From Setoptus koraiensis (lineage: Eukaryota; Animalia; Arthropoda), in assembly GCA_048013815.1 (NCBI GenBank), contig CM106585.1, positions 6,076,001-6,140,000 on the forward strand: 64,000 nucleotides of DNA. The letters are read 5' to 3'. Below are positions 6,001 to 35,786 of this stretch, in pieces. The notes beneath the pieces are model-generated. The model had not been told where the DNA came from. It made no database searches and saw nothing but the letters and a program-made list of their open reading frames with translations. The number at the start of each line of letters is the position of its first letter. Position 1 is the stretch's first letter. Made by a program: the position numbers and the translations under genes.

Positions 6001-9000
6001 GCGAAATTACATGTTACATGTGGTATGGAGACGTTGTTTAGTGGCAGCAGAGAACACTTTTCCCGCATCACCTTTTTCCTCCTTTTATGATGCCTCTGTT
6101 AAGCTTACCTGGCTGCCTGCTTGCCTGTAAACTGCTTGAGATCACCACCGCATTCTAATCAATTACCTGGTCGCCATCACATGAGTTGGTTGATGGCAGT
6201 GTCCGCATGACGTATGCAAATAAGCTGAATAAGCCGCTTCTCTCGCTATGATTGTCGCCTTAACCAAACAAAAACAATAAGTATTATATTTTTCTTTTTC
6301 TTTATTTTTGACAAATATCCAACATGAAATGAGAACATGATTTGATTGCGTGTGCGGATTGTTTTTTTATTACTGTGTCACACAGTTTGTGTGTGTGTCC
6401 AACGGCAAGGCCAACAAAAACACAACATCAACGAAAACTTCAAGACAGAAAAATGTCACCATGTTGGTGTGTCATTGACCCCAGCTAGCTACTCGTCGTC
6501 TGGATGATTTCATCATTATGTGTTTGCAGCTAGCGACACAACGGATGTCTAAGTATACGGGCAGCTTGTTGTTATTTCCAGTTTAGAATGTTTTGCAATG
6601 TGTTATAAGCTTGCCTTGCCGCTGTTTGCTTGATCCCATTCGAACATCTGAACAACCAGTGGTGATACCAGCGGTGATGATCTATCATCATATTTGATAT
6701 CAATTGTGTGACAGCTAACGCTGCGAAACGCGCTGCAATCACGGCTGTTTTTGTTTTTGGCGTCTTAGCAGCAGCAGCAGCGTCAAAAGGAGCAACAACA
6801 GCAACAACAACGACTGCAGCAACAGCATCTAATGTCACCAGATGATCATTCAATGTCAGACAAGACGATAGCCATTGTTTGCCAGTTTTCCAGTTGTTTG
6901 TGTCGCTTGCTAATCCTATGCGTTTGTTTGAATTTGCCCACTGTGCAGCTGTGTCCAGCGCACACTTGCCAACAATCGGCGCTAATGATGCACTTATTCA
7001 CCTGTTATCCCAAATATCAAGTAGCCAGCCAGCTGTGTGGTTGTTGGTTGAGAGCTATAATTTATTCAATCTAGTCTCGTTGTGCAAGTCTCAATGAGTG
7101 TGTATGTGTGTGTGTGTGTGCGTTTGGCACGTCCAAGTGAATGATGCTCCTTGTAGGAACAAGTGGAACAAGCTTGTCAAAGTGTCACACACGTGGACTG
7201 TCATTCACGTCCGTTCATTCTTAATTACTTAGTCTCCCTACTGGCGCACACTGGTGCCACTAACTTGTGTTTGCGATATTTGCGCTAGTCCGGCAAACAC
7301 ACAAACACTTGTCGTTGTTGCGTCCATTGTTTATATCGCCGCTGCTGCTGCTGCCGCTGTTGTTGTTGTTGGTGGTGCTACTTGACGGACACGACACCAT
7401 GGCGGCGACGACCATTGTTTTTAGTTCAAGTTGCTGTTGTTGTTGTCAGCAAAGTTAGCACATGCTGAGAATGAAATGACAACAATGCAAGATGGATTCT
7501 CATTGCTCTCTGGTATGTCCACTCACTGGCCGACGCTCACTGGGCCAAGACTGGCCATCAAGAATCAATGTTTTTATTTTGCGCACGTTGCAGCCGTTAT
7601 TTGCCTTTAGTTGTGGCCACTGTCCGTCACATCAGCAGCCCCACTGACGCAACCATGGCTTTGTTTGTCTCCGGGCGGCGTCGGCGCCGGCCCATGGGAC
7701 CCCTAACACACACGCACCAAGACAGAGAGCGAGAGGGAGAGAGAAGGGCGTCGATAGTAATGATGATGATCCTCTTACTTCTTCGTCGTCATCGTCGTCT
7801 TCTTCTCCCTCTCTCGCTGCGCACAACAACGCGACTAACAAGACTGGCTGAGAATATAGAGAATATAGAGCAGCTCGTATGTTATTATTATCATTATACA
7901 GCAACAATCGTTGCTCGCTTGGATAACGGCGCGCACACATGTGAGAAGCGACAGCGCAGCAGCAATAACGAGATTACGTCATCGTCGCTGTTCGTCACCA
8001 ACTGTGCTGTGGGCAAGCGACCAGTGTTGGCCTGTGCTAAACGACACATAACAGCCAAACATAACAAATGTCTTGATAGCTCTCTCGGACGAGCCACTGT
8101 GCGCAGCAGCAGCAGCAGCCACATGACAATATCGTCGTATCCATGTCAGCGGTGCTCGGGTTTTGGTCATTTCCGTTGAGAAGCGAGCCATTGTCAGGCG
8201 CGTATAGTGTTGGCCTAGTTTGTGCGCGAGCGCGAACAGTCGCCAGTGTACGTGTTATCTCTTTCTCTCCATGAATTCTTACATGTCGTTGGCACACACG
8301 CACAAGATGGATTTGGTGGTGGCGTCAGCGGCGCCCTCCAATGAACATTTTGTGCGCGAGAGGTGGGGGCATCAAGGTGAATTGAATTGAATTTCATCTT
8401 CGCTTTGTTGGGCTCGTTGTGCTGTGTTGTGCGTTGGTCGCTCGCTCTCATTCGCTTACGCAACAACAGATAGCATCTCTCGATTTAAAATTTTGATTCT
8501 TGGCCCCATTGTAAAGCGCTCGAATTCGCGGTGTTTTGTGGCCAAACAACCACTGACGACAGCGGCGGCGGCGGCGGCCAGTATAGCTCGACTGTAGTAC
8601 AGCAGCATTCGACAGTAGACAGCGCAAACTGTAGCTGGGGCACGCGCCACAACAACGCGCGTGCAAATGGTCTGTTCCTTGGTGAGTCATCATTTTCGTC
8701 ATCATTCTCTTTTGGCGCTGCCTGTCACATGCTGTTGTTGTCATTGTGTGTGTGTGTGTGTGTGTGACTGAGTCTTGACTGTTTGCCAGAAAACGAACGC
8801 GCAAAAGAAACAGATTAAATCGCCTACACAGACAGTGGTGATATAATGGCCCGGCAGTGAGTCAGTGGGCCGGCCCGGCCCGGCCATCCGGAGGTGAACA
8901 GAGGCCGGCGTGGAGAGCTTGGCTGGATTACGCTGGCGCTATTCTTCTCGGCGGCCACTCAACAAACAACTAGCGAGCTCATTAGTGGGCCGTATTGTCG

Positions 9001-30437: not shown

Positions 30438-33232
30438 TCAAGCAAGATAAATGAAAATATTCATATCATTGTCATCACGCTTCATATAGCGCTGCTCGAT
30501 CAACCATTCAATTTGTTCTTTTATCATCTTTTTTGAGGGTAAAAACATATTCTTCAAAATCTCGACTAGTTCGATTTGTAGTTGGGCATTAGATAGGCGC
30601 CGCCGCATTTTCATTATTTTCACTATGGCCTCTTGAGTTCTAAGTATTCTTAATTGAACAATGCTATCATTGTCTTCCTCGCGACTTTTTTCCGTTGACA
30701 GTTGTAAGCGTCCTATTAGATTGACACGTCCGCGAGTTTGAGGTTTTCCATTTTTACTGTAACATACGTAGCACGTAAATGAATATCATTAGTCAATAAT
30801 TAGTGTTTGTATATGTGGCAGGTCAATGGTTTGCAGGTGGTCATATTACTTACATTAAGCAGAAGTCCTGATTGACATATAACGAACTGGAATCGTCAAA
30901 GTCTTTGAGATTTTTCACCTCCGGCTCGCAGAGTAAAAGCTGACGCTTTAGTTTCGGATTGCATACCAACGACTGAGAAAGAGGAAAATGAACGAAATTA
31001 ATTATCCCTCTGAGTAATCAGACCCGCTGCAAACATTACAAGGCAATCATACTGACTGTCATTAAAAATACTTACCCAAAGCGTCTTCTTAAGTTCAATA
31101 TTGGGCAACTCGGTTGCTAGTCTCAGATCCTCGAAGCTGATCTTATCGAAAGAGCGCTCATTCCAGGCAAATAGCACTGCCATTTGGAAGGCGGTAACAT
31201 CCAGATCAAATTTTCCATTGTTTGTAGTGAAAGTCAATGTTCCATTTGACATATGATGATACCAAATCAATTTTCTACCCGAATGTTTTGTCTTATAGAA
31301 CTCCTCAATTTCCGGCACAATCTCTTCCATTTCTCTGGGTAGCGTGACGGGTATACGTTCGCCACCTCTGGACCAGGCACCGGCGTTGAGAATTTTGATG
31401 TTGATCGCATCGAGATTTTTTGCCATCCTCTCACTATTGGTTGCTGCAGTAGCTGGTGACATTGAACTACTGTCGTTATTTGAATGATTTATGTCGCCAC
31501 CGCTACTTGCGGACGATGATTGTTGCTGTTGTTGACTTTTCACTGACGATACTGTTATTATTGGCTGCTGTTGAGCACCCGGTTGCCTGAGACTATTCTT
31601 GAATTGTTGGTGCAGGTCCTCACTCACTTTTATATCTTGGAACATACGCGCCAACTTGTTAATGTGATCCGCTGGCATACCCAATTCCCTAAGGCACTCT
31701 ACCATATTTTCTTCTTTTTCACTATCTGCCGATGCGTTCAATATCAATCTACGCGTCAAATGGGCCTTGTGATAGCGCATAAAAACATCCTTGTTTTGTA
31801 CATATTTCAATACCAGAAGCACATCTTTCAGTTTGGCATCAATCTCGTCCGTTGTTAATTTTCGACTTAGAGCTGTTCTCCTCAATAACATATCACAGTA
31901 GTTGGCTAATAATTCGGGGCAACGAGATTCAGGTAGGCATTTCATTGTATGAGCATTATTGATTGACATTGCGAGAGATTGTTGTTGTAGTTGCTGCAAA
32001 GGTGATGCAACTTCACTGGAATTGTTAACAATAGCCCCAACGCCCTTACTTAGTTGTTGCTGTTGCAAAATATTGATTGTTTGATTACGTGATTTAGTTG
32101 GCAATTCTAATTTAAATATCCTAGTATCATTAACAACTGTCTTAAATGCTTGATCTCTGACTGTGGTGGCTCGCGGATCGTCTTCGAAGGCCTGCCATAC
32201 AAGATGGCTAAATTTGTGAAATAATCTAAGTAATTGCTCAACATATTTCTCCGAATCTTGCGTTATGGTGTCCGCAGAGGCCATCATATCATCGAGGCCC
32301 TTGGCGCAAATATGCTGACCTAAGTATTCTAGCATCTTTTCTACGCCTGATTCCTTGAGTTTGTCCATGAGTTTAAACATGAGCTTTAATTCGTCTGTCA
32401 TATTTTTCTCTATAAGCGATGGACACTCATTTAGTATAACTTCCCTAAAATTGGCTACTAAAATTTTTATACAACAATCATTGATTGATTTTATGGATTG
32501 AGCATTTGTCTCCAAGTACCTCCTGGCTCGTGCCTCCTCCTCTTTCAATTTCAAACTGGCCCATTTCATGTATTCCAAGACACCGTTTTCATATAAATAG
32601 GCCTGGGCTCTTGTTCTATAGTATTCTTCAGTTTCTTTCAAATAGTGCTTTTCAAAGCATTGTCTGTAGATCTTGAGTCTATCACTCGGATCTGAGCACA
32701 AATTAACATAGGACTCTCTAACACCAATAACAAGCTGAGAATCAAAAGTTTCACCGAGACGCTCGGCCCATAATAATTTCATTGCACTGTCTTGTAGTTT
32801 ACCTTGGATAGACGAAAATATGCTACTGTTCCATAAATCAAGCATCATGGTTCTAATAACATTATCTATGCTCTGATTATTTCTTAGATTGGACTTTTTT
32901 TTGCTATTCATAGCCATATCAAGTTGACAGAATGGCATTGGAACATAATTACATTGTTGATAAAACTTCTCCCATGCCTCAACATATGCTCGCAATAGCG
33001 AGTATTCATCTTGATGACTGAGTACGGTACATTGGACACCGATTATGAAATCAAGAATGTCGTGTTTAAGAGCCTGGTGTATCTTGAAACAGCCTTTGTC
33101 GTCCCATAGACAGACTATGTGGACGTCGCCAAATAGATCGTGCCATTCCTTTTTACTGACAGATTTCTGATGTAGTAACTTCTGGACGACAGGTCTCATT
33201 CGAGGCCAGTTTACCTCAAATCCTTTCTCCAT
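30438..33232 (-). CDS. CUL5: Cullin-5; exons 33232-31076, 30972-30854, 30756-30438 (864 aa)
   Basis: Contains FDSQLVIGVRESYVNLC, PESRCPELLANYCDMLLR, NKDVFMRYHKAHLTRRLIL and the neddylation region IMKMRRR..KEQIEWLIEQRYMKRD. Two short GT-AG introns restore SLVCNPKLKRQLL and KNGKPQTRGRVNLIGRLQL in frame. Confidence 0.96.
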
Positions 33233-33960
33233 ATTACCATAGGTATGTGGGCTTATATTATATATAAATAATACAATTTTTCTATGAAATAAATAGTTGC
33301 TGTAAATAATATGTATACGAATAGGCGATAATTATTATGATAGTCTGATAATTGTTTGATCCATTATTTGTGTCACCTGATTACTTGTTATGAAGGCGCT
33401 TACACATGGTAATAGCAGTATATATATTTATATAAACTAACATGAAAAAAATATAAATTTCAGCCGAAAATATAATTGAGTGAAACTGGTCTGCAGTTGA
33501 CGCATGTTACAGCTCTATAGCCGCCCATCTATTCGTATTGTATAATTGATCTTGTTTACTTGAAATATAAGGTGACTGCTGTATCCTTCGTACTGTGCGC
33601 ACGAACGAAATTGGGTTCCGCACAGAGCGTGACTCATCTGCTTTAGCGCTCACTCAACCGACACTGTGATATTCGGCGCACCACTGTTGTGTGTGCCAGC
33701 AAAACTACGCCATGTGCAATAGTCGGCTTTGACGGTGCATTTATAACGTTTCTGATCGAGGCGCACTAGTTTATGGTCACCCCATATAAACACAGAGGGT
33801 CTGGTCACAAACAAAACATCTGGATATAGTCTTCAATATTTCATTGTGTTGTCTTGGTTTATCCACTATTATTATCAAACGAATATTGATTTGTATCACT
33901 CTCTATCTATTAATATTATTATCATCATAGTCCATTGTTGAAATTACTAGCTGCAGGACC

Positions 33961-34230
33961 ATGCCACACGTAAGCTTGTCGTCGGTGGCCATATTATTAT
34001 CGGCCGTATTTCAATTCTTCGTCGTCTCATGCCAAGCCGATGGCTTGAAAAGACTCAATCTGGCCCCACTATACGACTCCCAGTTTCATGTACCATTCTC
34101 ATTAATAGCTTTCAGCTCCATTGTTTTGGTGCTGGCCGCTTTTGGAGTTTCGGTGGCCATGTGGAACCTGGATCCCGGCAGGGATTCTATCATTTACCGA
34201 ATGACTGGCCAACGAAAGAAGGACCAGTGA
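33961..34230 (+). CDS. ATP6AP2: Miniature ATP6AP2/(pro)renin receptor-like V-ATPase accessory protein (89 aa)
   Basis: The C-terminus NLAPLYDSQFHVPFSLIAF..AMWNLDPGRDSIIYRMTGQRKKDQ matches the ATP6AP2 TM/cytosolic signature (MDPG[Y/R]DSIIYRM). The N-terminus is signal-peptide-like. Confidence 0.9.
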   Translation: MPHVSLSSVAILLSAVFQFFVVSCQADGLKRLNLAPLYDSQFHVPFSLIAFSSIVLVLAAFGVSVAMWNLDPGRDSIIYRMTGQRKKDQ

Positions 34231-34373
34231 GGAATATTCACCGGCAAATGTGTACACTAGATACTTGCAGCATTTTCGTGTCAATGAACGAAATGAAGTC
34301 TGACAAACTCAAAATTTGTTTTAGTCAATATTATCATATGCTCATCATGTAACCCAGAATACAATCAATAATG

Positions 34374-34457
34374 AATAAAAACAGCAGCATATAGCCCAGA
34401 CACTTGGTTTGCCTACGAGCTACACTAGTTATATTCTAGTATAATGTTTTGTTTATT
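34374..34457. terminator. Convergent polyadenylation signals (ATP6AP2 on +, NEK on -)
   Basis: AATAAA at 34374-34379 on + and TTTATT at 34452-34457 (AATAAA on -) lie between the two stop codons. Confidence 0.5.
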
Positions 34458-34550: not shown

Positions 34551-35786
34551 TTAAAAGGATTTCACCAGGGTCAATTGTTCTTCATACAAACTATCCACAA
34601 CAAGGCATATTTCATCCATTTTAGGCCTGAGCTCGTGTTGAGGATTCAGACAGTGACCGATCAATTCTTTGAGTTTGCTAGAGAAGTTGGCCTCTATTGG
34701 CCGAAAATGACCATTATTAATTCGATCAATGAGATCTTGTAGATTTATTATGTCGCCTCTATTATCATATTCTATATGGTGATTTGGCTGAGCCGTGGCA
34801 ACCAAGCGATCGGGCTGATCGTACTGGTAACCAGCACAAAAGGGAGGCCTGAGTGCCATCAATTCGTACAAGACACAACCCACCGACCAGACGTCTGAAC
34901 TAAAACCATAACCAGATTGTCTTATTCTTTCCGGTGCCATATAATAGAATGTGCCCACCAGCGAGTAGGCGTCCATTGTTTGTGGACTAAAGTACCGGCC
35001 CAAACCGAAATCTCCCAATTTTACGCAACCGCTGCTTGTCATAAATATGTTGGCCGGTTTAATATCACGGTGTAGCACGCTCTTAGAATGAATATACTTG
35101 ACCGCAGAGCAAATTTGAGTAAAGTACTTCAACACTGTCTTCTCCGTCAATAATTGATGTTGCTTCAGGAAGTGTCTTATCAATTTTGACAGGTCGCCAC
35201 CGTCTGCCAATTCGAGCACTATAAATAGGTCATTTTTATCTATAAATGATAAACTGTATCTTATTATATTTGGATGGTCAAGCTTCTGCAATAGATTGAT
35301 CTCTCTCAGGCAATCCACTCTAGATTTGGCGTCTTTCATATCGAATATTTTCACTCTTTTTAGAGCCACAATATGACTATCGTCCTTGTGGTGGTTGCTT
35401 TTGAATATCTTGTTGCTTGCCCCCTTTCTGCTGGTAGTTATTTTCTTGTGCCTGATAGATCTAGATCGGACATGAAAGCGATTGTGATGAAAATCTTTGC
35501 CTTTGTCTTGTGAAATAGCTTTGAAAAGTTGACTTGACTCGTTTGGAGTATGGTCATTCGGAGTTACGCGTTGCTGTTGATCACTGGCAGCAAACACTGG
35601 CGTCACGATTGTTGCGTCACAAATTGAAGCGTTCAACCATTTCGCCTTGTACACATCACTAAATTGTCCCTTGCCGATTGGCTTGATTAATTCAAATTTT
35701 GGCTTGTAGGTCAAGTTGTCCAGATTGGTCATTGGATGACCAGGCAAATGGGCGCCCACATCCGGTTGTTGTTGACAATGTTGCAT
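34551..35786 (-). CDS. NEK7: NIMA-related Ser/Thr kinase NEK6/7-like, single coding exon (411 aa)
   Basis: Motifs IGKGQFSDVY, VALKRVKIFDMKDAKSRVDCLREINLL, HRDIKPANIF, KLGDFGLGRYFS and YYMAPER match the NEK6/7 subfamily. I cannot distinguish NEK6 from NEK7. Confidence 0.92.
   Translation of the reverse strand: MQHCQQQPDVGAHLPGHPMTNLDNLTYKPKFELIKPIGKGQFSDVYKAKWLNASICDATIVTPVFAASDQQQRVTPNDHTPNESSQLFKAISQDKGKDFHHNRFHVRSRSIRHKKITTSRKGASNKIFKSNHHKDDSHIVALKRVKIFDMKDAKSRVDCLREINLLQKLDHPNIIRYSLSFIDKNDLFIVLELADGGDLSKLIRHFLKQHQLLTEKTVLKYFTQICSAVKYIHSKSVLHRDIKPANIFMTSSGCVKLGDFGLGRYFSPQTMDAYSLVGTFYYMAPERIRQSGYGFSSDVWSVGCVLYELMALRPPFCAGYQYDQPDRLVATAQPNHHIEYDNRGDIINLQDLIDRINNGHFRPIEANFSSKLKELIGHCLNPQHELRPKMDEICLVVDSLYEEQLTLVKSF

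What the first reader, a model, noticed from the sequence alone, without database searches (positions are those of the whole stretch)
33961..34230. Miniature ATP6AP2: signal peptide fused directly to the M8-9 membrane fragment
ATP6AP2 is normally about 320-350 aa, with a luminal domain that furin/S1P cleavage sheds to leave the short V-ATPase-bound M8-9 fragment. Here the whole ORF is 89 aa: an apparent signal peptide (..VSCQA/DG), DGLKR, then the conserved NLA..TM..DPGRDSIIYRM tail. Only about 730 bp separate it from the divergent cul5 start, too little for the missing roughly 250 codons. The gene appears to encode the processed form directly, a natural test of whether the ectodomain (linked to Wnt/PCP and prorenin binding) is dispensable.
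Basis: partly seen in the sequence, partly recalled or inferred. Interest (0 to 1): 0.72.

Follow-up and report, generated by a model that had tools for sequence, protein, structure and literature searches.

The report
Mite proton-pump helper protein without ectodomain
In this gall/rust mite, the proton-pump accessory protein ATP6AP2 is made from a tiny unspliced gene that encodes only a signal peptide and the membrane stub that sits in the pump, although fly and mouse experiments found the missing outer domain essential.

Summary
The ORF at 33961-34230 (+) encodes 89 aa. Residues 29-87 match Pfam Renin_r, the ATP6AP2 C-terminal membrane segment (E 3.7e-18), behind a signal-peptide-like N-terminus.

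- **Transcript:** RNA-derived contigs from two runs lie colinear on 33801-34397 and 33813-34348. They have no joint and no loose end at the proposed acceptor near 33956.
- **Reading frame:** An in-frame stop lies at 33928, and the leader has no ATG.
- **Signals:** TATAAA lies at 33785 and AATAAA at 34374.
- **Ectodomain:** A profile of 52 full-length proteins finds the exons in Oppia and Sarcoptes, but nothing in this 64-kb window or in seven relatives' loci.
- **Spread:** Ten Renin_r-only ORFs of 62-88 aa share the same C-terminal signature. Some of them lack even the signal peptide.
- **Orthology:** Halotydeus destructor has an annotated 87-aa version at the locus where Oppia carries the 343-aa gene.

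I read it as a real, expressed mini-ATP6AP2, equal to the engineered signal-peptide-plus-C-terminal-fragment construct that fails to rescue flies. I could not test for a full-length copy, or a separate ectodomain gene, elsewhere in this genome. The scan's index lists only this same stretch.

The parts
33785..33790 (+). TATAAA box, the only one in 33601-33960, 11-28 nt upstream of where the RNA contigs begin
   Evidence: contig starts at 33801 and 33813
33801..34397 (+). Transcribed unit as seen in RNA-derived contigs. It is unspliced and about 600 nt long, and its 160-nt leader has no ATG
   Evidence: X4 record 16 at 33801-34397; X5 record 23 at 33813-34348; no joints or loose ends; no ATG in 33801-33960
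33928..33930 (+). In-frame TAG upstream of the start codon. It lies inside the transcribed leader, so the reading frame cannot continue from upstream on this transcript
33961..34230 (+). Coding sequence of mini-ATP6AP2, 89 codons plus stop
33961..34038 (+). Predicted signal peptide, residues 1-26, with cleavage inferred after S-C-Q-A
   Evidence: hydrophobic core; small residues at -1 and -3 read from the sequence. No signal-peptide predictor was available
34045..34221 (+). Renin_r (PF07850) match, residues 29-87
   Evidence: PDB alignments
34102..34158 (+). Transmembrane helix core, residues 48-66 (19-residue Kyte-Doolittle mean 2.48)
34216..34227 (+). C-terminal K-K-D-Q, a dilysine KKxx ER-retrieval type motif
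   Evidence: The requirement for KKXX in fly ATP6AP2 comes from PMC6249795
34374..34379 (+). AATAAA polyadenylation signal, 18 nt before the end of the X4 contig
30998..33232 (-). Divergent neighbour: first large exon of a cullin (cul5-like) gene. It is followed by a 103-nt intron at 30973-31075 that is confirmed in RNA

Best explanation
This is a complete, expressed, intron-less gene for a miniature ATP6AP2. The 89-aa precursor enters the ER through an N-terminal signal peptide, which is probably cut after residue 26. That would leave a 63-aa, roughly 7-kDa type I membrane protein with three parts: about 20 luminal residues starting just before the conserved L-N-L-A motif, one transmembrane helix, and a roughly 20-residue cytosolic tail ending in K-K-D-Q. 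This is the part of ATP6AP2 that is ordered inside the c-ring of the V-ATPase Vo sector in solved structures, and the part that furin/S1P cleavage leaves on the pump as M8-9. The protein therefore most likely acts as the Vo-bound subunit and KKxx-retrieved ER assembly helper, without any luminal RENR_N domain.

Its likely origin is loss of the internal ectodomain exons, with the signal-peptide exon and the last exon kept. Halotydeus still shows that arrangement, with two tiny introns, at the ancestral locus. Eriophyoid relatives went further, and some dropped the signal peptide as well.

Shown here: the ORF, the domain match, the unspliced RNA contigs, the absence of ectodomain coding nearby, the relatives, and the synteny in Halotydeus. 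Inferred: signal-peptide cleavage, topology, residence in the pump, and absence of any other copy in the genome.
For: - **Domain:** Renin_r match at E 3.7e-18. Alignment to residues about 290-346 of ATP6AP2 chains in V-ATPase structures; the 49-residue chain 8xli_p matches query residues 33-79.
- **RNA:** colinear contigs over 33801-34397 and 33813-34348, at higher contig depth (19-26) than the contigs over the two neighbouring genes (3-10), with no joints or loose ends. The runs are shown to be RNA by the spliced cul5 junction.
- **Gene signals:** in-frame stop at 33928, no ATG in the leader, A at -3, TATAAA and AATAAA in the right places.
- **Variation:** the two differences in X5 (34069 C>T, 34119 C>A) are both synonymous.
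- **Ectodomain:** tblastn with 52 full-length proteins and a profile HMM of their ectodomains find the exons in Oppia (E down to 5e-13) and Sarcoptes (E 6e-12). Nothing better than E 3 appears in the window or in L001-L004, L007, L008 and L010.
- **Relatives:** ten Renin_r-only ORFs of 62-88 aa share the C-terminal signature. None of the proteins fetched with that signature is longer.
- **Relatives with a signal-peptide-like start:** P0012 and P0166 are single ORFs.
- **Relative without room for one:** L007 has only 204 bp between the upstream gene's stop and the start codon.
- **Synteny:** the NCBI 'Renin receptor' of Halotydeus destructor is 87 aa in three exons and lies between a UCH gene and a homeodomain/OAR gene. 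The full-length Oppia gene has the same neighbours.
- **Intron position:** the last intron sits just before L-N-L-A in Oppia, Dinothrombium and Halotydeus.
Against: - The rest of this genome could not be searched, so a full-length paralogue or a separate ectodomain gene is not excluded.
- The ectodomain evolves fast: only 3 hits came from a word-indexed search with the Oppia ectodomain. A very divergent remnant could escape the profile.
- The run records do not state RNA. That status is inferred.
- Contigs cannot show rare spliced isoforms or true transcript ends.
- Signal-peptide cleavage rests on simple rules only. The 17-residue hydrophobic core could instead stay as a second membrane helix.
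- In flies, a signal-peptide-plus-C-terminal-fragment construct does not rescue lethality. In mouse cells the ectodomain was needed (PMC6249795, PMC3817224). A sole mini form therefore implies compensation that has not been identified.
- The window's gene does not share neighbours with the other loci.
Confidence: 0.78

Rival explanations
1. The mini gene is an extra, truncated paralogue. A normal full-length ATP6AP2, or a separately encoded ectodomain, exists elsewhere in the genome and does the ectodomain-dependent work.
For: The whole genome could not be searched. The window's gene has different neighbours from the relatives' loci, as a relocated copy might. Fly and mouse experiments say the full-length protein is needed.
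Against: In Halotydeus the mini gene occupies the ancestral locus itself. No long protein with the clade's C-terminal signature appeared in the exhaustive HMMER search, which has no length limit. The scan's index lists no other ATP6AP2 note in this genome, which is weak evidence.
Confidence: 0.15
2. The ORF is the last exon of a conventional multi-exon ATP6AP2. The apparent signal peptide is intron or leader sequence that happens to be open, and the upstream exons lie beyond the cullin gene.
For: In many other arthropods the last exon starts just before L-N-L-A, and read-through of the pyrimidine tract gives hydrophobic pseudo-N-termini in ORF calls (P0005, P0006, P0030, P0037). A cag lies at 33954-33956.
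Against: RNA contigs run colinear across 33956 and across the whole supposed signal peptide, with no joint or loose end. An in-frame stop at 33928 lies within the transcribed leader. No ectodomain signal occurs in the 34 kb upstream or the 30 kb downstream. Three independent relatives have their own signal-peptide-like starts.
Confidence: 0.04
3. It is a decaying remnant with no function: a pseudogene fragment that happens to be transcribed.
For: It is very short and has lost most of the ancestral protein.
Against: The frame is intact. 29 columns are invariant among four mini proteins, and 11 remain invariant across 16 sequences that include full-length ones. The KKxx end is kept. Both polymorphisms are synonymous. 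The contig depth is above that of the contigs over the neighbouring genes. The same reduced form is kept in at least eleven other sequences.
Confidence: 0.03

Closest known systems
Full-length ATP6AP2 / (pro)renin receptor (human 350 aa; Drosophila VhaM8.9/VhaPRR 320 aa; Oppia nitens P0013 343 aa; Sarcoptes scabiei P0015 297 aa)
   Same: Same C-terminal Renin_r segment: the L-N-L-A motif, the transmembrane helix, the D-P-G-R-D-S-I-I-Y-R-M-T block and a dilysine end. Residues 23-89 are 60% identical to the Oppia protein.
   Different: The RENR_N luminal domain (PF25294, about 250 residues) is missing, and so is the furin-type R-x-x-R site. The signal peptide abuts the membrane-proximal stub directly.
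M8-9 / C-terminal fragment (CTF) left on the V-ATPase after furin or S1P cleavage
   Same: The predicted mature product (63 aa, about 7.1 kDa) covers the same segment, and covers the part modelled in V-ATPase structures.
   Different: It is made directly from a gene, not by proteolysis of a precursor. It therefore never passes through a full-length stage, which is the stage Guida et al. consider the active assembly factor.
Engineered signal-peptide-plus-CTF constructs (fly D252-N320, Guida et al. 2018, PMC6249795; domain deletions in mouse cells, Kinouchi et al. 2013, PMC3817224)
   Same: The same architecture by design: signal peptide, short luminal stub, transmembrane helix, tail with KKXX.
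   Different: The constructs rescue yeast voa1 vma21QQ only weakly, fail to rescue fly lethality, and lack activity in mouse cells. The natural mite form appears to be the resident version in whole lineages.
Halotydeus destructor 'Renin receptor' (NCBI, 87 aa, P0011)
   Same: Signal peptide plus Renin_r only; 62% identical to the window protein over the aligned part.
   Different: It has three exons with two introns of about 55 nt. It still sits between the ancestral UCH and homeodomain/OAR neighbours and keeps the R-M-K-K-D-Q end, one residue longer. The window gene has no intron and has other neighbours.

Membership tests
ATP6AP2 / (pro)renin receptor | C-terminal Renin_r transmembrane segment (Pfam PF07850) above the curated cut-off | tested here: met
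   65.8 bits against a cut-off of 27.8, E 3.7e-18, residues 29-87. PDB ATP6AP2 chains match at E about 1e-9.
ATP6AP2 / (pro)renin receptor | N-terminal luminal domain RENR_N (Pfam PF25294) | tested here: not met
   No Pfam hit in the ORF. tblastn with 52 full-length proteins and an ectodomain HMM find nothing in the 64-kb window (best E above 7), while they find the Oppia and Sarcoptes exons.
ATP6AP2 / (pro)renin receptor | Cleavable signal peptide and type I topology | tested here: inconclusive
   A hydrophobic core at residues 6-22 and small residues at -1 and -3 (C-Q-A then D-G) fit a signal peptide (and the sequence). No dedicated predictor was available, and cleavage is inferred.
ATP6AP2 / (pro)renin receptor | Furin/S1P-type processing site between ectodomain and membrane stub | tested here: not met
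   Only L-K-R lies before L-N-L-A, and there is no R-x-x-R. No processing is needed if the stub is made directly.
ATP6AP2 / (pro)renin receptor | C-terminal dilysine (KKxx) ER-retrieval motif, required for function in fly and yeast assays | tested here: met
   The protein ends K-K-D-Q, and K86 and K87 are nearly invariant in the 16-sequence alignment. The requirement comes from PMC6249795.
ATP6AP2 / (pro)renin receptor | Orthology by conserved gene neighbourhood (UCH upstream, homeodomain/OAR downstream in acariform mites) | tested here: not met
   The window's neighbours are a cullin and a protein kinase, and no neighbour is shared with other loci. The feature is met for the Halotydeus mini gene.
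ATP6AP2 / (pro)renin receptor | Physical residence in the Vo c-ring next to ATP6AP1 | not testable with these tools
   Inferred from homology to the modelled segment in PDB chains.

The most novel reading that the evidence does not exclude
Eriophyoid mites and at least one eupodoid mite run their V-ATPase with an ATP6AP2 reduced to the c-ring stub as their only copy. Some lineages have even dropped the signal peptide, leaving a roughly 62-68-aa protein that must insert N-terminus-out without one. On this reading the luminal domain, which fly and mouse experiments find essential for V-ATPase assembly and planar polarity, is not a universal requirement. The shared loss may also be a rare genomic character bearing on where the four-legged mites sit among Acariformes.
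Probability: 0.6. Interest if true: 0.75.

Novelty: new variant of a known kind. Interest (0 to 1): 0.68.

Why it matters
ATP6AP2 is a human disease gene (glycosylation disorder, X-linked intellectual disability and parkinsonism). How its work is divided between the ectodomain and the membrane stub is still argued.

- Domain-deletion work in mouse cells found the ectodomain indispensable for V-ATPase biogenesis (PMC3817224).
- In flies, the signal-peptide-plus-C-terminal-fragment construct cannot replace the full-length protein (PMC6249795).

A group of animals that encode exactly that construct as their natural gene gives a ready-made comparison. One can look for what changed in the partners (ATP6AP1/Ac45, VMA21, Frizzled and Flamingo polarity proteins) to allow it. 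The mite proteins can also be put into the published yeast and fly rescue assays.

The finding adds to a pattern of trimmed proteins in these very small genomes. I found no paper in the held library that describes an ectodomain-less ATP6AP2 gene.

Tried and rejected
- **Upstream splicing.** The acceptor-like cag at 33954-33956 and a possible aag before 34036 were considered. RNA contigs cross both without a break. A GTAAG at 33970 would, if paired with that aag, break the frame (read).
- **Exact look-up.** The 89-aa protein is not in the 15-billion-protein collection, so this species' own proteome could not be queried.
- **Ectodomain search.** The word-indexed search with the Oppia ectodomain gave only 3 hits. 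That is too insensitive to say anything about separate ectodomain genes.
- **Dinothrombium (L009) and P0010.** Too little upstream DNA, or no DNA at all, so I could not tell mini from full length.
- **Naming the nearest full-length representatives.** This returned only spiders, a tick and an isopod. No spider-mite entry was identified.
- **UniRef100_T1K8C1.** The organism of this 67-aa, Renin_r-only entry is not shown by the tools. I take it for Tetranychus urticae from memory only.
- **Structure prediction.** Not run, because a single helix gives no informative fold search.
- **Signal-peptide prediction.** No SignalP-type tool was available.

Full report
**1. Observation**

The + strand carries an ATG-to-TGA ORF at 33961-34230 that encodes 89 aa. 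Pfam-A places residues 29-87 on positions 19-77 of the 79-position Renin_r model (PF07850), at 65.8 bits against a cut-off of 27.8 and E 3.7e-18.

Against PDB sequences, the same residues align to residues about 290-346 of ATP6AP2 chains from human, rat, bovine and other V-ATPase structures, at E about 1e-9. The 49-residue chain 8xli_p matches query residues 33-79. The predicted mature protein therefore covers the part of ATP6AP2 represented by that chain.

The first 26 residues have a 17-residue hydrophobic core and end in S-C-Q-A before D-G.

The neighbours are a cullin gene on the minus strand, whose ORF starts at 33232 (Pfam Cullin, E 1e-135), and a convergent protein-kinase gene at 34551-35786. 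The two divergent start codons are 728 bp apart.

**2. Is it a whole gene or a last exon?**

One read-laying run was available. Runs X1 and X3 cover the whole 5.9-kb stretch evenly, as DNA assemblies do. Runs X4 and X5 (one study) have contigs only over coding stretches.

One X5 contig fits 31076-31155 and then runs on for 161 unlike letters. The 30 loose letters shown lie at 30943-30972. The skipped 103 nt read GTAAGT...CAG on the minus strand. That is a spliced cul5 junction, so these runs are RNA-derived even though their records do not say so.

In both runs the ATP6AP2 locus is covered by one contig colinear with the genome: 33801-34397 (599 nt, contig depth 19) and 33813-34348 (536 nt, contig depth 26). 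The contigs over the two neighbouring genes have depths of 3-10. No joints and no loose ends were reported for these runs in this interval.

- They also cross the in-frame TAG at 33928.
- The 160-nt leader has no ATG, and the start codon has A at -3.
- The only TATAAA of the interval lies at 33785-33790.
- AATAAA lies at 34374-34379, 18 nt before the end of the longer contig.
- The two differences seen in X5 (34069 C>T, 34119 C>A) are both synonymous, Leu37 and Ser53.

Contigs cannot prove transcript ends or exclude rare isoforms. The main transcript is nevertheless unspliced, and its first ATG opens this ORF.

**3. Is the ectodomain nearby?**

I took 52 full-length homologues (270-400 aa) returned by the exhaustive HMMER search.

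- tblastn of these against the window and the fetched loci gave only scattered hits with E above 0.25 for the ectodomain part. The C-terminal part hit one place in the window.
- A profile HMM of the 52 ectodomains, run with filters off on all six-frame segments, recovered the ectodomain exons in the Oppia locus (E 5e-13 to 5e-4) and in the Sarcoptes locus (E 6e-12).
- The same profile found nothing better than E 3 in the window or in the relatives' loci L001-L004, L007, L008 and L010.

Two cautions apply. The two positive controls were part of the training set. The ectodomain also evolves fast.

**4. Relatives**

Earlier notes of this scan describe the genome as a gall or rust mite, Eriophyoidea. 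I did not verify the species.

The closest proteins in two very large collections are all short. Ten ORFs of 62-88 aa share a distinctive C-terminal signature with the window protein: W-N-L-N-P-G (with minor variants in three of the ten) plus the end Q-R-K-K-D-Q, which is one residue shorter than in other mites. The window protein itself reads D where these have the second N. No protein longer than 88 aa among the 239 fetched carries that signature.

Their contigs are gene-dense. Three of the loci share a WD40 gene, a small ORF and Rad10 around the mini gene. The window shares none of these neighbours.

- **With a signal-peptide-like start:** P0012 (L001) and P0166 (L008) are single ORFs.
- **Without one:** P0157, P0159, P0163, P0164 and P0168 start with Met only 4-10 residues before the conserved L-x-L-A motif and have no hydrophobic N-terminus.
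- **L007:** only 204 bp separate the stop of the upstream SET-domain gene from the start codon, and that interval holds no signal-peptide-like ORF.
- **L003:** the only other candidate start is an ATG followed at once by GTAAGT, with a CAG acceptor 80 nt later, in frame with E-K-P-L-G-L-A-P.

So part of this clade seems to have lost the signal peptide as well.

**5. Orthology and origin**

The NCBI protein 'Renin receptor [Halotydeus destructor]' (P0011) is 87 aa, from assembly GCA_022750525.1. One search gives the protein's organism, and the papers tie the assembly to the same mite.

Its gene has three exons separated by two GT-AG introns of about 55 nt. The first two exons encode a signal-peptide-like start, and the third begins two codons before L-N-L-A. 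It lies between a UCH gene and a homeodomain/OAR gene.

- The 343-aa Oppia nitens protein (one search gives the name) has RENR_N plus Renin_r and lies between the same two gene families.
- The 297-aa Sarcoptes scabiei gene has the homeodomain neighbour (assembly identified).
- The Dinothrombium last exon also has the homeodomain neighbour.
- In Oppia and Dinothrombium the last exon begins one codon before L-N-L-A.

The simplest reading is an in-place loss of the internal ectodomain exons that kept the signal-peptide exon and the last exon. In the intron-poor eriophyoids the remaining introns were then lost. That reading is an inference. I could not decide whether Halotydeus and the eriophyoids share one loss or lost the exons separately.

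**6. How it most likely works**

By homology, the mature 63-aa product (about 7.1 kDa) is the counterpart of the M8-9 fragment. It would have a short luminal stub, one helix inside the c-ring, and a cytosolic tail with a KKxx end.

In fly ATP6AP2 the KKXX motif is required for function, and the protein acts in the ER as a Vo assembly factor together with ATP6AP1 (PMC6249795). The mite protein keeps that motif. I therefore expect it to cycle between the ER and the Golgi and to be built into Vo.

What it cannot do is anything that needs the luminal domain. That includes the N-terminal contact with ATP6AP1 described in that paper, and the ectodomain-dependent Frizzled and planar-polarity roles.

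The published experiments make this notable.

- The fly construct made of a signal peptide plus D252-N320 rescues yeast voa1 vma21QQ less well than the full-length protein.
- That construct does not rescue fly lethality, even when co-expressed with the N-terminal fragment.
- In mouse cells, both the ectodomain and the transmembrane domain were indispensable.

**7. Comparison and novelty**

It is known that the C-terminal part is conserved across metazoans while the prorenin-binding part is conserved only in vertebrates (PMC3553411). Searches of the held library found no description of a gene encoding only the C-terminal part, and nothing on ATP6AP2 in mites. The Aculops genome paper mentions neither renin receptor nor V-ATPase.

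The protein meets the Renin_r and KKxx criteria of the family. It fails the RENR_N and processing-site criteria. I file it as a new variant of a known kind.

**8. Limits**

- The rest of this genome, and the genomes behind the Logan contigs, could not be searched. A full-length paralogue or a split-off ectodomain gene remains possible; I put it at about 15%.
- The RNA status of X4 and X5 is inferred.
- Signal-peptide cleavage and pump residence are inferred.
- The species names of the Logan samples are unknown.

Noticed in passing
window 33438-33439: In DNA run X1, the two contigs that meet at this TA each continue into unlike letters that are reverse complements of each other over at least 24 nt. 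That sample carries an element with terminal inverted repeats and a TA target duplication between cul5 and the mini gene. The element is absent from the window and from run X3, and the window holds no copy of the repeat.
   Followed up: partly
window 30973-31075 (minus strand): A 103-nt GTAAGT...CAG intron of the cullin gene is confirmed by a spliced RNA contig. The first cullin exon (30998-33232 as an ORF) carries long Q- and S-rich inserts inside the Cullin domain match.
   Followed up: partly
L007 3696-3902; L010 64-252; proteins P0157, P0159, P0163: Relatives have even shorter Renin_r-only ORFs (62-68 aa) with no signal peptide. They would need to insert with the N-terminus outward without one.
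   Followed up: partly
L003 5952-6035: A candidate intron starts immediately after the start codon (ATG then GTAAGT, with a CAG acceptor 80 nt on, in frame). The alternative start at 6001 gives the 72-aa ORF P0009. Neither version has a signal peptide.
   Followed up: no
protein P0016 (UniRef100_T1K8C1, 67 aa): A UniRef entry annotated as containing only the Renin receptor-like C-terminal segment starts Met-Ala-Thr-Asp-Glu-Lys before the conserved L-N-L-A motif. The tools do not show its organism. If it is Tetranychus urticae, which I recall from memory only, ectodomain loss would extend to spider mites.
   Followed up: partly
window 34551-35786 (minus strand): An intron-less protein-kinase gene converges on the mini gene, and its ORF has about 120 residues ahead of the kinase domain. 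Only about 150 nt separate the kinase ORF's stop codon from the end of the mini gene's RNA contig.
   Followed up: no
L001, L003/L004, L008, L010: WD40, a small ORF of 136-159 aa and Rad10 lie near the mini gene in L001, L003/L004 and L008; L010 shares a Methyltransf_8 and an NPL gene with L008 and a ribosomal S23 gene with L001. These loci seem orthologous to one another. The window's locus has been rearranged relative to them.
   Followed up: yes
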